Positions 103-52,722 of a stretch of 64,000 nt of DNA are shown piece by piece. Origin of the DNA: Orbicella franksi. Its lineage: Eukaryota. The stretch covers positions 26,474,001-26,538,000 of the forward strand of contig OZ116702.1 in NCBI GenBank assembly GCA_964199315.1, read 5' to 3'. The notes under the pieces are model-generated. The model saw only the letters and a list, made by a program, of their open reading frames with translations. It was not told the origin of the DNA and did not search any database. How positions within the stretch are numbered: position 1 is the stretch's first letter; each line of letters begins with the position of its first letter. The position numbers were made by a program, and so were the translations under genes.

Positions 103-3100
103 CTGTTGGTATGCTGGGGTCGCTGGGGCCACTGGAGCCGCTGGGGCGGCTGGGGCGGCAGCCATTTGGGTCTGGGCCATCAAGTTGGGGTCACAGCAGC
201 AGCAGTCCTGACTCATTGAGCACTGCTGCGTACAAGGGTCCATGCAGTTGCCCTGACAAGGGGTCATATCTTGGCTGGTGTCATTGCTATAGTTATAAGT
301 CCAGTTGTAGCCATTAAAGGACAAATCAATTGCGTTATAGTTTGGTGGTGGACTCTGGGCTTGCGGTGCTGCAAGGTACAGGAAGCGATTATTTTCATGG
401 GGTCGCATTGGTGACAGACGACAAAGGATACAACATCTTCGATCGTCGTGAATGAGAAAATGAATACATTTTTTTTTAATGTTTTGGCACTTGTTTTAAT
501 TTTTCTTTGATCTCCAAAAATCAAACATGTGTGATTGATGACGACGACGACGATGATCAAGATAATGACTGGATTGGATGATGACGACACCGTTGTACAA
601 CATTGACGTCATAAGAAAAATATAAAACCTAGTCATGATGTATCTCGTTGGCAATCACAAAAATAGTCAAGACTACATTGACTCACCTTGTGCCTGTGTG
701 TTGTAGGGGGCTGGCGGTGAACTCGCTGGATGCTTGCTGGCGTCTGACACATGCGGATGATGGTGATGATGATGATGATGATGCTTGTGATGCAGAACAC
801 GGTGGTGGTATTTCTTCCAGTGTGGCTTCTTGGCGTGTTTGTGATGGAATTTTTTTGCTTTCGGCTTCTTTTTTGCATCAACTGGTGTTACAATGTAAGG
901 GATTTTAAAGTTCACAAGAAAAGAGCCATCTTTGTTCTTTTTAGGTTTGTTCTCTTCGTCCTGATTCGTTAACACTTTTTTGGCACCGAGGTGGAGAAGT
1001 GACATTTCTGTATTGAGGAAAAAGTACAAGAAAATTGATATTGTTTGCGCATTGTTCTCTGAATCAAGATTCAATCGCGTGTCTGGCTGGCTTGTGGGGT
1101 TCTTAGGCAAGACGCTTTACTCTCACAGTGCCTCCCTCCACATGCACGCAACTGTGTGAATTTTTTTCTGGCAGATTGTAGGGATAGGTTTACAATATTT
1201 AAGCAATAGACCACAAGTTTTTATGGTTTATAGGCTGATAGACCACTCAAAGAATTTGTAAATCACTCGCCTGCGGCTCGTGATTTACGAATTCTTTGAG
1301 TTTTCTTCCACCATCCCGCTTATCAGCCTATAAACCATAAAAACTTGTGGCCTATTGCTTTTATATAATAATTCAGAAGACACGCGAAATTTCCGAGTTT
1401 ACTGGCAAAATAAGCCATAGCTGATTGACCAATCAGAGCGGGCGCATTCATTTAATTATTATATAAACGGAATTAACCTGTAATGGACTGGTACTAATCC
1501 AGGGGGAATAACGATGTGCTTTGCCAGGTATTGCTGCGGACACTAGGTTAGGATTCAGACTGGGGCATCTGGTCCACAAATACTGAGTAATCTATAAAAT
1601 TTGCTAAATTTATCTTCTGGAAGCTGCACTTGTGAATATTACTTAAGCAGGTCAAAATCTTGAATGGATTAGATGCAATTCTCTCACCCGGTATTCACTT
1701 GATACTTGCTTCTTTAGGGGACATCATTACTGAAAAAATTTACAGGTTTGAATTGACTTTGAAAGGGAAGCTTGTGGGGGAAACTACGAAATGTTTCTTG
1801 AATAAAAATAAGAGCAGTTTAGGTGTTATACGGTGATAGTATACGGTTTGATAATGATACGAAACTGAAGAGTTCGCCTCCTATACGTATTTCCTGAGTT
1901 ACCTTTTTGTTTGTCCGACTGGATATTTGCTGCTCTTTGATCTGCATGATGACCTGTTAAAGGTAAGGCAAACTGAATGAAAGAAGTTCCATCTTCACAA
2001 GCGTGCATAGACCTTGGATCGTTTCACTGGCTTTGCAATACCCCCAAGCGATTATAAAAGGCTCCTTCTCTGTCCTCAAGACCTAAAGATCATTCCACTG
2101 AAATAGAGCCTGCACTGAGATTTTTGTCAAACTTTGCCTATTGACTGTTTATATTGTAGGAACTTAAATTTGGAGATAAAAATGAGGGGTCCCCATGTTC
2201 GTCAAGGAGCAACAGCATCTTGTCTATACCATATAAATCCTTACAATAGCACCATGATTATTGTCACGATTGCTTGGTAAATTAACGTTTCCGACGATTG
2301 TTTCTTGCTCAACACTGAGAATTGGCCCATATTTATTTTACATAGAGAAATTTATTACTCAATTCAACACAACAGAAAAAAAATGATAGGTCACCTTACT
2401 CATTTTCGAGAAAATGACGATTCACCTCCATGGCGAGGTCCAGCGGCAAAGAAAAAGCCGCCATTTTTAATGCGCGCGCGCTAATCACGCGTGAAATTAT
2501 GCGCAGTAGGGATGCGCAATGTAATAGGGGAATGGGGAATGACCTTAAAAGCATGACACAGTACGTGAAACGGATGATGCTACAGCAATTCAAGGTTACT
2601 ACCTGATCAATGCACTATCAAAAATGGTTAGATTATGATTAATCCATTTTTATTTCAGTTAATAACATTGCTCTTTTTCGTTTTATGATGTAATCTATTT
2701 CTGTAGCCATTTCACTCTTTAATCCACTGCCGGCTTTACCCTGGCAGCACAATGCCCGCACCTCTATATTTGTGCACAGCCAAGAAACGTTCATTCTTAA
2801 TTTTTTAAGGAGTGAAATAATATTAATCTAGGAATTGTCATTTATTTTCGTGCATCCAGAAGTAAAACTGTGCAGAGTCTTGAGTCTTACCAACTGCGTC
2901 GTTTAGAAAATCTGTAACTTCCTTCGCAGCGTCATTAACCTTTTTGCCTACAGAAAGGGAGAAAGGACAGACATAATATAATTGTCCTTGCCTATCAGTT
3001 ATATTTAACTGGATAAATGATCCCACATAGAAGAGGGTTGCATGGCCGCTATAAATCTGGCTGCGGTTGTCCGAATGAGGATTAAACTGGTACAGTGCTT

Positions 3101-52640: not shown

Positions 52641-52722
52641 CTCTAAGGCCCTTACAGAGCTGTAGACTGCCTTGATCGCTCAAAGCACGTAACGTTTATT
52701 GACCTTGCTATTGAATTATTAA
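52641..52722 (-). promoter_or_regulatory. Putative core promoter and short non-coding exon 1 of gene H (same geometry at genes F and G)
   Basis: TATA-like CAATAAA at 52701-52695, 60 nt upstream of the exon-1 donor. AT-rich TGAATTATTAA at 52712-52722. Confidence 0.45.

What the first reader, a model, noticed from the sequence alone, without database searches (positions are those of the whole stretch)
103..52641. Co-oriented cnidocyst structural gene cluster mixing collagenous and non-collagenous CRD proteins
Seen: ten loci in ~52 kb, all on the minus strand: six intact minicollagens, two remnants and two secreted collagen-less CRD proteins. Related genes are adjacent (C+D; E/F/G/H). Established: minicollagen genes are reported to cluster in cnidarian genomes. 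Inference: the two non-collagen CRD genes belong to the same co-regulated capsule-building unit, which appears to continue past the left edge. Each member retains a different subset of the N-CRD / polyPro / helix / C-CRD architecture, suggesting a parts kit for different capsule layers or cnida types.
Basis: partly seen in the sequence, partly recalled or inferred. Interest (0 to 1): 0.72.

Follow-up and report, generated by a model that had tools for sequence, protein, structure and literature searches.

The report
Coral stinging-capsule protein gene cluster
A stony coral carries a one-directional row of at least twelve genes for stinging-capsule building proteins, mixing short collagens with collagen-free cross-linker proteins; part of its gene order is shared with a sea anemone, but shared regulation is not shown.

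Summary
All ten loci are on the minus strand. They are six intact two-exon short-collagen genes (C-H), two decayed collagen fragments, and two secreted collagen-free CRD genes (A, B).

- **Boundaries corrected.** A is a seven-exon gene of 430 aa starting at 5906 and ending 1.3 kb beyond the left edge. B starts at 17060 and makes two spliced isoforms with different CRD-bearing last exons.
- **Extent.** The array runs a further 38.6 kb to the left with at least four more collagen-free CRD genes, about 91 kb in all. No CRD or collagen hit lies in the 101 kb beyond its left end or the 42 kb to its right.
- **"Minicollagen" is loose.** Only D has a canonical CRD. None has both.
- **Synteny.** E-D-C-B-A is kept in a second coral and C-B-A in Desmophyllum. 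B-A-Z1 is kept in Nematostella, which also has B's two alternative last exons.
- **Selection and expression.** dN/dS is well below 1. B is spliced in polyA RNA.
- **Not shown.** Cnidocyte-specific expression of A and B, and co-regulation. No shared promoter word was found.

Minicollagen clusters and collagen-free CRD proteins are already known. Other notes of this scan report CRD-only gene clusters elsewhere in this genome.

The parts
103..5906 (-). Gene A, in-window part. Exons: 5906-5786 (signal peptide), 3446-3354, 2947-2891, 1953-1903, 1007-687 (His/Lys-rich), 368-103 (N-glycosylation-site-rich, with an atypical CRD at 199-258). The last exon lies off-window at G000:C5:26472704-26473084 and holds a canonical CRD and an acidic tail. 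Product: 430 aa.
   Evidence: Exon blocks are colinear with Desmophyllum L021. All junctions are GT-AG and the frame stays open. The same junctions appear in full-length orthologue P0014 (416 aa, from a 2.3 kb Logan contig) and in P0018.
5907..6678 (-). Conserved non-coding block directly upstream of gene A's start codon; a candidate promoter or enhancer.
   Evidence: blastn: window 6678-5730 against Desmophyllum L021 16098-17042, 72% identity over 984 bp. It is the only DNA-level match in the A-B intergenic region. All frames carry stops.
10282..17060 (-). Gene B. Shared exons: 17060-16979 (signal peptide), 15913-15890 (basic), 14689-14603 (acidic), 12312-12265 (acidic Ser-Gly), 11910-11893. 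Isoform alpha then reads on to the stop at 11480-11482, with a 3'UTR to about 11237 (223 aa). Isoform beta splices to 10835-10285 (270 aa).
   Evidence: RNA contig joints 12310>14601 and 14689>15890 in three runs. An 18-nt loose end at 12265 equals 11910-11893. In X3 the depths are 176 shared, 88 alpha and 62 beta. All sites are GT-AG. Orthologues: P0004, P0007, P0008.
11483..11910 (-). B alpha terminal exon: CRD (11786-11839), Pro-Met repeats, a half-CRD, poly-Pro, CRD (11540-11593) and a basic tail. The layout resembles Hydra CPP-1.
   Evidence: Conserved in L020/L001, L021 and Nematostella L022 6867-7388. dN/dS 0.10-0.12.
10285..10835 (-). B beta terminal exon: variant CRD (10663-10725), a half-CRD, a Pro/Gln-rich spacer, CRD (10363-10419) and a basic His tail.
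   Evidence: Nematostella counterpart at L022 7726-8469. dN/dS 0.09-0.37.
20565..21753 (-). Gene C. Exons 21753-21690 and 20761-20568; 86 aa. Signal peptide, a TKR propeptide end, 13 Gly-X-Y triplets, and a C-terminus with only CC. No CRD.
   Evidence: Orthologues with the same truncated layout in L020 10079-10195 and Desmophyllum L021 1677-1793. dN/dS 0.09-0.25.
23507..24421 (-). Gene D. Exons 24421-24358 and 23835-23510; 130 aa. Canonical N-terminal CRD (23762-23815), Pro-rich linker, 13 triplets, and a C-terminus with only CC.
   Evidence: Orthologue at L020 5365-5616 with the same layout.
26918..28330 (-). Gene E. Exons 28330-28252 and 27216-26921; 125 aa. Nine-Cys variant N-terminal CRD (27116-27172), poly-Pro, and 12 triplets holding 3 Cys. 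It ends in GR, with no C-terminal Cys.
   Evidence: Orthologue at L020 1877-2122 also ends in GR and keeps Cys in the helix. dN/dS 0.09.
32694..34519 (-). Gene F. Exons 34519-34450 and 33097-32697; 157 aa. CCPCC plus Pro9, 30 uninterrupted triplets with 7 Cys, and a Pro-rich C-terminus with 5 Cys.
   Evidence: Pfam Collagen E 1e-14. The splice model is predicted only.
38852..39124 (-). Remnant 1: a weakly collagen-like, degenerate stretch.
   Evidence: Homologous to remnant 2. blastx to D, E 6e-7, and to F, G and H around E 1e-4.
42945..43203 (-). Remnant 2: a stop-interrupted fragment of a G/H-type collagen exon that keeps the GLPGKPAL motif.
   Evidence: blastx to G residues 178-214, 54% identity, E 8e-8, and to H, E 1e-7, with in-frame stops.
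44069..46274 (-). Gene G. Exons 46274-46202 and 44775-44072; 259 aa. Four triplet blocks (15, 13, 13, 17) separated by Ala-X-Pro, 6 Cys in the helix, and reduced Cys clusters at both ends.
   Evidence: Pfam Collagen E 1e-29. Exon 2 is held at 0.23-0.62 of sampled words by RNA runs of four studies.
49303..52377 (-). Gene H. Exons 52377-52308 and 49661-49306; 142 aa. CC plus Pro7, two blocks of 15 triplets separated by Ala-Leu-Pro, 4 Cys in the helix, and a C-terminus ending ACCG.
   Evidence: Pfam Collagen E 2e-16. The splice model is predicted only.

Best explanation
This is the right-hand two thirds of an array of about 91 kb built by tandem duplication. The array holds genes for secreted, disulfide-cross-linking structural proteins of cnidocysts. 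On the minus strand it reads H-G-(two dead fragments)-F-E-D-C-B-A-Z1-Z2-Z3-Z4.

C to H are two-exon short collagens of the minicollagen kind. Each has a signal peptide, a propeptide ending in KR or RR, Pro-rich flanks and 12 to 58 Gly-X-Y triplets, but their cysteine-rich ends are reduced or variant. A, B and Z1-Z4 have no collagen. They carry 2 to 7 minicollagen-type CRDs joined by poly-Pro, Pro/Gln-rich, His/Lys-rich or acidic Ser-Gly stretches.

Inferred mechanism, from what is established for Hydra minicollagens, CPP-1, Cnidoin and NOWA: the products enter the post-Golgi capsule vesicle, and their CRDs or Cys clusters swap disulfides to lock them into the wall or tubule polymer. Gene B makes two different cross-linkers from one promoter by choosing between two last exons.

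The shared orientation is most simply a trace of tandem duplication. Shared regulation is possible but not shown.
For: Shown here:
- Motif density is far above chance and confined to one strand.
- Gene models are open and use GT-AG sites.
- B's splicing and both isoforms appear in polyA and cDNA RNA contigs.
- A's exon junctions match full-length orthologues.
- G's second exon is held by RNA runs of four studies.
- Order and strand are conserved in three other species: E-D-C-B-A, C-B-A and B-A-Z1.
- dN/dS is 0.09-0.37.
- Z1 has a ShK domain in both the coral and Nematostella.

From the literature:
- CRDs cross-link capsule proteins, and CPP-1 is CRD-polyPro-CRD without collagen (PMC6910907).
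- Minicollagen-like genes with incomplete features are cnidocyte-specific in Nematostella (PMC12549020).
- Minicollagen genes occur in clusters (PMC7981951, PMC9112765).
Against: - No cell-type or protein-localisation data for any gene of this array could be reached.
- The splice models of C, D, E, F and H rest on consensus sites and orthologous reading frames, not on RNA.
- Five of the six collagens lack a canonical CRD, so how they are cross-linked is inferred.
- Pfam has no model for the CRD, and A and B match no family.
- Raw polyA reads of one related-species run (X24) gave no coverage of B.
Confidence: 0.75

Rival explanations
1. One reading: the whole array is one co-regulated unit under common control (shared enhancers or one chromatin domain), switched on together to build one capsule.
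For: All twelve or more genes are co-oriented, with no recognisable foreign gene between them. Only retroelement fragments intervene. Order has been conserved over long periods. A 770-bp non-coding block upstream of A is conserved. Co-expression of clustered minicollagens is reported for Aurelia (PMC9112765).
Against: No 6- to 8-mer is shared by the eight proximal promoters beyond chance; the best has a Bonferroni-corrected p of 0.16. In Nematostella, NCol4 (NV2.11801, nematocyte) and NCol5 (NV2.11802, spirocyte) have adjacent gene numbers but different cell types. The same block of numbers mixes both kinds (PMC12549020 text and supplement; bioRxiv 10.64898/2026.06.23.733813).
Confidence: 0.2
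2. A and B, and perhaps Z1-Z4, are not capsule proteins. They would be other secreted Cys/Pro-rich matrix proteins, for example acidic skeletal organic-matrix proteins of the coral, that merely share a cysteine motif and a neighbourhood.
For: Both have long acidic Asp/Glu/Ser-Gly stretches like acid-rich biomineralisation proteins. No expression data tie them to cnidocytes. They match no Pfam family.
Against: A, B and Z1 have orthologues in the same order in Nematostella, which makes no skeleton. In the papers read here, the strict CX3CX3CX3CX3CC motif is described only in capsule proteins (PMC6910907, PMC12549020). B alpha has the CPP-1 layout.
Confidence: 0.08
3. Several of the 'minicollagens' (C, E and H, which lack CRDs) are decaying copies on their way to becoming pseudogenes, like the two remnants.
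For: They lack the defining terminal CRDs. Two clearly dead fragments lie in the same array. The splice models are not RNA-verified.
Against: The reading frames are intact and carry signal peptides. The same truncated layouts are kept in orthologues: C in two species, D and E in one. dN/dS is 0.09-0.25 for C and 0.09 for E.
Confidence: 0.07

Closest known systems
Minicollagen gene clusters of cnidarians (Khalturin et al. 2019, as cited in PMC7981951 and PMC9112765)
   Same: Several short-collagen capsule genes lie side by side in one orientation and arose by tandem duplication.
   Different: Here half of the members have no collagen at all, and five of the six collagens lack canonical CRDs. 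Co-expression, reported for Aurelia, was not tested. I could not read the original paper, so I cannot say whether collagen-free members were noted there.
Hydra CPP-1 (cnidarian proline-rich protein 1; PMC6910907)
   Same: B alpha and Z3 have a CRD, a poly-Pro run and a CRD, with no Gly-X-Y. That is the published CPP-1 design.
   Different: No sequence comparison was possible because no CPP-1 sequence was available from the tools. B alpha also has an internal half-CRD, Pro-Met repeats and an acidic Ser-Gly N-terminal part, and it is one of two isoforms.
Nematostella 'minicollagen-like' proteins and NvNCol-7 (PMC12549020)
   Same: These are short collagens with incomplete minicollagen features. 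NvNCol-7 has blocks of 12 or 15 triplets interrupted by single Ala, as G and H do. Their gene numbers are clustered: NV2.11801, 11802, 11814, 11815, 11816 and 11818, plus 11820.
   Different: G has 4 blocks and H has 2, against 25 in NvNCol-7, and both lack its canonical CRDs. Orthology was not tested. Physical adjacency in Nematostella is inferred from gene numbering only.
NOWA (Hydra; four genes in Nematostella)
   Same: Z1 is a large secreted protein with a C-terminal array of CRDs (seven).
   Different: Z1 has a ShK domain where NOWA, from background knowledge, has SCP and C-type lectin domains. The Nematostella NOWA gene numbers (NV2.15872, 10392, 10388) lie elsewhere.
Cnidoin (Hydra; PMC4321713, PMC6910907)
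   Same: A non-collagen spacer flanked by CRDs and built into the capsule wall.
   Different: Cnidoin's spacer is a silk-like elastic sequence. None of the spacers here was seen to be of that type.

Membership tests
Minicollagen (sensu David et al. 2008, as restated in PMC12549020 and PMC13307990) | Short central Gly-X-Y triple-helix domain (about 12-16 repeats) | tested here: met
   C and D have 13 triplets and E has 12. F (30), G (58 in four blocks) and H (30 in two blocks) are longer. Pfam Collagen is significant for F, G and H.
Minicollagen (sensu David et al. 2008, as restated in PMC12549020 and PMC13307990) | Polyproline stretches flanking the helix | tested here: inconclusive
   Clear on the N-terminal side in E, F, G and H, and short in D. 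C has none there. The C-terminal side has only APPGPP in C and D and nothing in E.
Minicollagen (sensu David et al. 2008, as restated in PMC12549020 and PMC13307990) | N-terminal and C-terminal CRD with six Cys (CX3CX3CX3CX3CC) | tested here: not met
   Only D has a canonical N-terminal CRD, and E has a nine-Cys variant. No gene has a canonical C-terminal CRD. They are therefore better called minicollagen-like.
Minicollagen (sensu David et al. 2008, as restated in PMC12549020 and PMC13307990) | Signal peptide plus a propeptide ending in basic residues | tested here: met
   All six have a hydrophobic first exon and KR, RR or LR just before the mature part. No signal-peptide predictor was available.
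Minicollagen (sensu David et al. 2008, as restated in PMC12549020 and PMC13307990) | Expression restricted to developing cnidocytes | not testable with these tools
   Only bulk RNA was reachable: G's second exon is held by RNA runs. No cell-type data were available for this species.
CPP-1-like collagen-free CRD proteins | Terminal CRDs flanking a continuous polyproline stretch, with no Gly-X-Y | tested here: met
   B alpha: CRD at 11786-11839, a Pro14 run, and CRD at 11540-11593. Z3, at -29907 to -30332, has the same layout.
CPP-1-like collagen-free CRD proteins | Sequence homology to Hydra CPP-1 | not tested
   No CPP-1 sequence was obtainable. Searches with B alpha returned nothing.
CPP-1-like collagen-free CRD proteins | Localisation in the nematocyst wall, released only by reduction | not testable with these tools
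   This needs antibodies or proteomics.
NOWA | SCP and C-type lectin domains followed by a C-terminal CRD array | tested here: not met
   Z1 has a ShK domain (Pfam E 4e-9) and seven CRDs. No SCP or lectin match was found in the exons scanned.
Minicollagen gene cluster | Two or more minicollagen-type genes adjacent and co-oriented | tested here: met
   Six within 32 kb, all on the minus strand. The order is conserved in a second coral.
Minicollagen gene cluster | Co-expression of the members | not testable with these tools

The most novel reading that the evidence does not exclude
This is an ancient 'capsule-matrix locus' that predates the split of stony corals and sea anemones. In it, collagen-free CRD cross-linkers (the B-A-Z1 trio) and minicollagen-type genes have stayed physically linked because they share long-range regulatory elements. 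Within it, gene B's conserved choice between two last exons, and the E-H subfamily's cysteines inside the triple helix, are so far undescribed ways of tuning how capsule polymers are cross-linked in different cnida types.
Probability: 0.25. Interest if true: 0.65.

Novelty: new variant of a known kind. Interest (0 to 1): 0.45.

Why it matters
Cnidocysts are a textbook example of a new organelle built from lineage-specific proteins. Work on their parts list and its genomic organisation has centred on the minicollagens. This locus adds four points.

- **Linked collagen-free genes.** Collagen-free CRD proteins, known biochemically from Hydra, sit in the same tandem array as minicollagen-type genes in corals.
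- **A trio conserved across Hexacorallia.** B, A and Z1 keep their order from stony corals to a sea anemone. They are unnamed or misnamed in public annotation. NCBI calls the Nematostella A orthologue 'mothers against decapentaplegic homolog 5'. No name fitting them turned up in the parts of the Nematostella matrisome tables I searched.
- **Two cross-linkers from one gene.** Gene B makes two different products by alternative last exons, and the arrangement is kept in Nematostella.
- **Testable candidates.** The locus gives concrete genes for cnidocyst proteomics and single-cell look-ups. It is also a natural test case for whether structural-gene clusters of a novel cell type are co-regulated or merely co-located.

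Tried and rejected
- **Genome-wide CRD census.** A protein search with a three-CRD exon found only itself. The share of this genome's CRD and minicollagen genes held by this array is therefore unknown.
- **Homologue searches.** B alpha and the Nematostella B beta exon returned nothing, probably because of low-complexity composition. I could therefore not walk upstream of B in Nematostella to test linkage to its minicollagens.
- **ESM Atlas search with B beta.** The only hit scored 0.76, to a nematode Cys-repeat cluster, which is uninformative.
- **Exact-protein look-ups.** The Porites, Acropora and Montipora B orthologues were not on record. One ENA locus had no DNA. L023 was too short to show A's neighbours.
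- **Shared promoter words.** None was significant in the 300-400 bp upstream of the eight start codons.
- **Raw polyA reads of X24.** No coverage of B. This is uninformative, because the run is from another species label and only 12% of it was read.
- **Stylophora cell atlas.** The supplements held contain no marker tables.
- **Skeletal-matrix reading of A and B.** Rejected because the trio is conserved in Nematostella.
- **Pseudogene reading of C and E.** Rejected on conserved layouts and low dN/dS.
- **Other ORFs.** Ten ORFs of 100 aa or more elsewhere in the window had no Pfam match.
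Full report
**What the window is**

The window is G000:C5:26474001-26538000 of a 497-Mb chromosome-scale assembly. The organism is a stony coral. A protein encoded here is 81% identical to a Porites harrisoni protein, 75% to Acropora cervicornis, 73% to Montipora foliosa and 65% to Desmophyllum pertusum.

Positions left of the window are given as negative window coordinates. The genome position is 26474000 plus the coordinate. The N run at 57303-57470 was left untouched.

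**Checking the observation**

A six-frame scan found collagen-type Gly-X-Y runs only on the minus strand, at six places:
- 20619-20735
- 23564-23680
- 26927-27034
- 32760-33029
- 44126-44674
- 49327-49605

The plus-strand 'runs' there are the Gly-rich reverse frames of the same DNA.

Minicollagen-type cysteine-rich domains (CRDs, CX3CX3CX3CX3CC and near variants) also lie only on the minus strand. I fetched 140 kb to the left and 30 kb to the right. Over the resulting 234 kb there are 24 relaxed and 16 strict CRD matches, against 0.05 and 0 in block-shuffled sequence and 0 in the reversed sequence. All lie between -38472 and 27172. With the collagen exons, the array spans -38.6k to 52.4k, about 91 kb. 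No CRD or collagen hit lies in the 101 kb beyond its left end or the 42 kb to its right.

**The six collagen genes**

Each collagen ORF is preceded, 1.0-2.6 kb upstream, by a short exon that starts with Met and a hydrophobic stretch. It joins that exon through GT-AG sites just before a KR, RR or LR propeptide end.

| Gene | Exons | Length |
|---|---|---|
| C | 21753-21690, 20761-20568 | 86 aa |
| D | 24421-24358, 23835-23510 | 130 aa |
| E | 28330-28252, 27216-26921 | 125 aa |
| F | 34519-34450, 33097-32697 | 157 aa |
| G | 46274-46202, 44775-44072 | 259 aa |
| H | 52377-52308, 49661-49306 | 142 aa |

These splice models are predictions. My single read-laying run went to gene B.

The domain table shows that 'minicollagen' is a loose label here.
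- **C:** 13 triplets, no N-terminal Cys or poly-Pro, and only CC at the C-terminus.
- **D:** a canonical six-Cys N-terminal CRD and 13 triplets, but only CC at the C-terminus.
- **E:** a nine-Cys variant CRD, poly-Pro and 12 triplets, ending in GR.
- **F:** 30 triplets, with a reduced Cys cluster at each end.
- **G:** four blocks of 15, 13, 13 and 17 triplets separated by Ala-X-Pro, with reduced Cys clusters at both ends.
- **H:** two blocks of 15 triplets, with reduced Cys clusters at both ends.
- **E to H** also carry 3, 7, 6 and 4 cysteines inside the helix.

By the published definition (Gly-X-Y flanked by poly-Pro and by N- and C-terminal CRDs; PMC12549020, PMC13307990) none is a full member. 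They match what the Nematostella matrisome paper calls 'minicollagen-like'. The Ala-interrupted block design of G and H recalls NvNCol-7 in that paper.

They do not appear to be decaying genes.
- The same truncated layouts occur in orthologues. C-like genes are in two other corals, and D- and E-like genes in one.
- dN/dS is 0.09-0.25 for C and 0.09 for E.
- G's second exon is held at 0.23-0.62 of sampled words by RNA runs of four studies. RNA libraries can contain DNA, and I could not lay these runs.

**The two remnants**

The stretches at about 38852-39124 and 42945-43203 are homologous to each other (75% over 235 bp). They match nothing else in the 234 kb at DNA level.

Remnant 2 translates, with in-frame stops, to a stretch 54% identical to G residues 178-214 (E 8e-8), including the GLPGKPAL motif. 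Remnant 1 is more degenerate, with a best E of 6e-7. Remnant 2 is therefore a credible dead collagen fragment and remnant 1 a weak one.

**Gene B**

Annotated orthologues (P0004, P0007, P0008) pointed to a signal-peptide exon at 17060. Logan contigs of three RNA runs, including a polyA library and a cDNA library, gave the following:
- GT-AG joints at 12310>14601 and 14689>15890.
- A loose end joining 15917 to the end of exon 1.
- An 18-nt loose end at 12265 that is exactly 11910-11893.

The refined model uses only GT-AG sites. Its shared exons are 17060-16979, 15913-15890, 14689-14603, 12312-12265 and 11910-11893. After 11893 there are two outcomes.
- **Isoform alpha (223 aa):** the transcript reads on to a stop at 11480-11482, with a 3'UTR to about 11237. 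It carries a CRD, Pro-Met repeats, a half-CRD, Pro14, a CRD and a basic tail.
- **Isoform beta (270 aa):** an internal GT donor is used and the transcript joins 10835-10285. It carries three CRD-type motifs with a Pro/Gln-rich spacer.

Contig depths fit a branch point. In X3 they are 176 upstream, 88 for alpha and 62 for beta. In X10 they are 43, 22 and 19.

B is therefore one locus, secreted, spliced and transcribed. This agrees with another note of this scan (s1-237938). RNA runs of at least four studies hold the region.

**Gene A**

Its seven exons are 5906-5786 (signal peptide), 3446-3354, 2947-2891, 1953-1903, 1007-687, 368-103 and -916 to -1296. All junctions are GT-AG, and the first five introns are in phase 1. 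The product is 430 aa.

It has a His/Lys-rich stretch and an atypical CRD ending in four consecutive cysteines. Then come an Ala/Pro-rich linker, a canonical CRD and a long acidic tail.

An exhaustive profile search with the His/Lys exon found two full-length orthologues:
- P0014, 416 aa, from a 2.3-kb Logan contig, with identical exon junctions.
- P0019, which is Nematostella XP_032222423.1, 343 aa, with both CRDs. Its automatic NCBI name, 'mothers against decapentaplegic homolog 5', is clearly a misnomer.

Neither A nor B matches any Pfam family.

**The left flank**

Four more collagen-free CRD genes follow on the same strand.
- **Z1:** at least -5836 to -12556, with a ShK domain (Pfam E 4e-9), a Lys/Glu-rich part and seven CRDs, one of them split by an intron.
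- **Z2:** CRD exon at -19612 to -20340, with four CRD-type motifs and Gln/Pro-rich spacers.
- **Z3:** -29447 to -30332, with an acidic Ser-Gly exon followed by CRD, poly-Pro, half-CRD, poly-Pro and CRD. It looks like a paralogue of B alpha.
- **Z4:** -35872 to -38637, with very long poly-Pro runs and several CRDs. It may be one gene or two.

Their upstream exons were not modelled.

**Synteny**

- **ENA coral assembly ERZ25071792, contig ctg18856.** E-like, D-like and C-like genes, both B exon groups and A exons lie in the same order on one strand (L020 and L001).
- **Desmophyllum pertusum, MU826826.1.** C-like, B and A are in the same order (L021).
- **Nematostella, OW051986.1:10.855-10.878 Mb.** Three consecutive same-strand genes are present (L022):
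  - a B orthologue that also has an alpha-like and a beta-like terminal exon (6867-7388 and 7726-8469);
  - the A orthologue;
  - a 675-aa ShK-plus-CRD gene colinear with Z1.

The collagen-free trio and B's two-ended design therefore predate the split of stony corals and sea anemones.

The matrisome supplement and a 2026 preprint give these gene numbers:
- NV2.11801: NCol4
- NV2.11802: NCol5
- NV2.11814: NCol7
- NV2.11815: NCol6
- NV2.11816: NCol-like 3
- NV2.11818: NCol-like 4
- NV2.11820: NvNcol0

That is seven genes within twenty consecutive numbers. It suggests a cluster, but only if the numbering follows genome position, which I infer from other paralogues having consecutive numbers.

**Mechanism**

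Shown:
- secretory signal exons;
- CRDs under purifying selection (dN/dS 0.09-0.37);
- transcription and splicing of B;
- conserved linkage.

Inferred from the Hydra literature (PMC6910907, PMC4863159): the products enter the capsule vesicle, and their CRDs exchange disulfides to build the wall or tubule polymer. Poly-Pro, collagen, acidic and His-rich spacers would give different mechanical or chemical properties.

That E to H use helix cysteines in place of terminal CRDs is my inference.

**Co-regulation**

- All members are co-oriented, and no foreign Pfam-bearing gene interrupts the array. Only retroelement fragments do. Tandem duplication explains this by itself.
- No short word is shared by the eight proximal promoters beyond chance.
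- In Nematostella, minicollagens with adjacent gene numbers are split between nematocytes and spirocytes (PMC12549020).
- A 770-bp non-coding block upstream of A is conserved with Desmophyllum. It is a candidate regulatory element for A alone.

**Novelty**

Minicollagen clusters are described for Anthozoa, Hydrozoa, Cubozoa and Scyphozoa (PMC7981951; PMC9112765). Collagen-free CRD proteins (NOWA, CPP-1, Cnidoin) are known from Hydra. Other notes of this scan report CRD-only gene clusters elsewhere in this same genome (s1-198440, s1-198443, s1-214227; not checked by me).

What I did not find described in the papers reachable here:
- the physical mixing of both kinds of gene in one array;
- the Hexacorallia-wide B-A-Z1 trio, whose members are unnamed or misnamed;
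- the conserved alternative last exons of B.

I rate this a new variant of a known kind, of moderate interest.

Noticed in passing
window 5730-6678 (minus strand): A 984-bp block, 72% identical to Desmophyllum L021 16098-17042. It covers gene A's first exon plus about 770 bp of non-coding sequence upstream, and is the only DNA-level conservation in the 4.4-kb A-B spacer. It is a candidate promoter or enhancer.
   Followed up: partly
window 9216-9914: A 235-bp unit repeated 3.0 times in tandem at 98% identity, between genes A and B. A short translated match to a single place in the Desmophyllum locus (L021 14507-14560) suggests a recent local triplication of an older element.
   Followed up: no
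window 13800-14400 (inside intron 3 of gene B): RNA contig depth in the thousands in three runs, with many strand-switching and internal joints. This points to a highly transcribed, multi-copy repeat. Beside it lies a retroelement fragment with a zf-RVT match at 12633-13247, and related ORFs run to 13766.
   Followed up: no
L022 10001-12637 (Nematostella OW051986.1): The Nematostella orthologue of gene A (XP_032222423.1) carries the automatic NCBI name 'mothers against decapentaplegic homolog 5'. The protein has a signal peptide, a His/Lys-rich run and two CRDs, and no Pfam family matches it.
   Followed up: partly
L022 2800-6430 (intron region of the Nematostella B orthologue): A long array of short tandem repeats gives spurious Cys-rich ORFs in several frames (of the MSCHVMSCHV type). 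These produced false CRD-regex hits at 5820-6075, which are not CRDs.
   Followed up: no
window 1500-2500 and 4437-5150: Interspersed repeats lie inside gene A's introns. A 420-bp element at about 2080-2500 has at least 39 copies of 91-95% identity across the genome. A reverse-transcriptase-like ORF of 237 aa lies on the plus strand at 4437-5150, with no Pfam hit.
   Followed up: no
G000:C5:32372422-32372733 (+), C15:3036754-3046821 (-), C5:28038814-28042897 (-) and others: A genome search with minicollagen D found further collagen-like exons elsewhere. One match covers D residues 4-107, CRD included.
   Followed up: no
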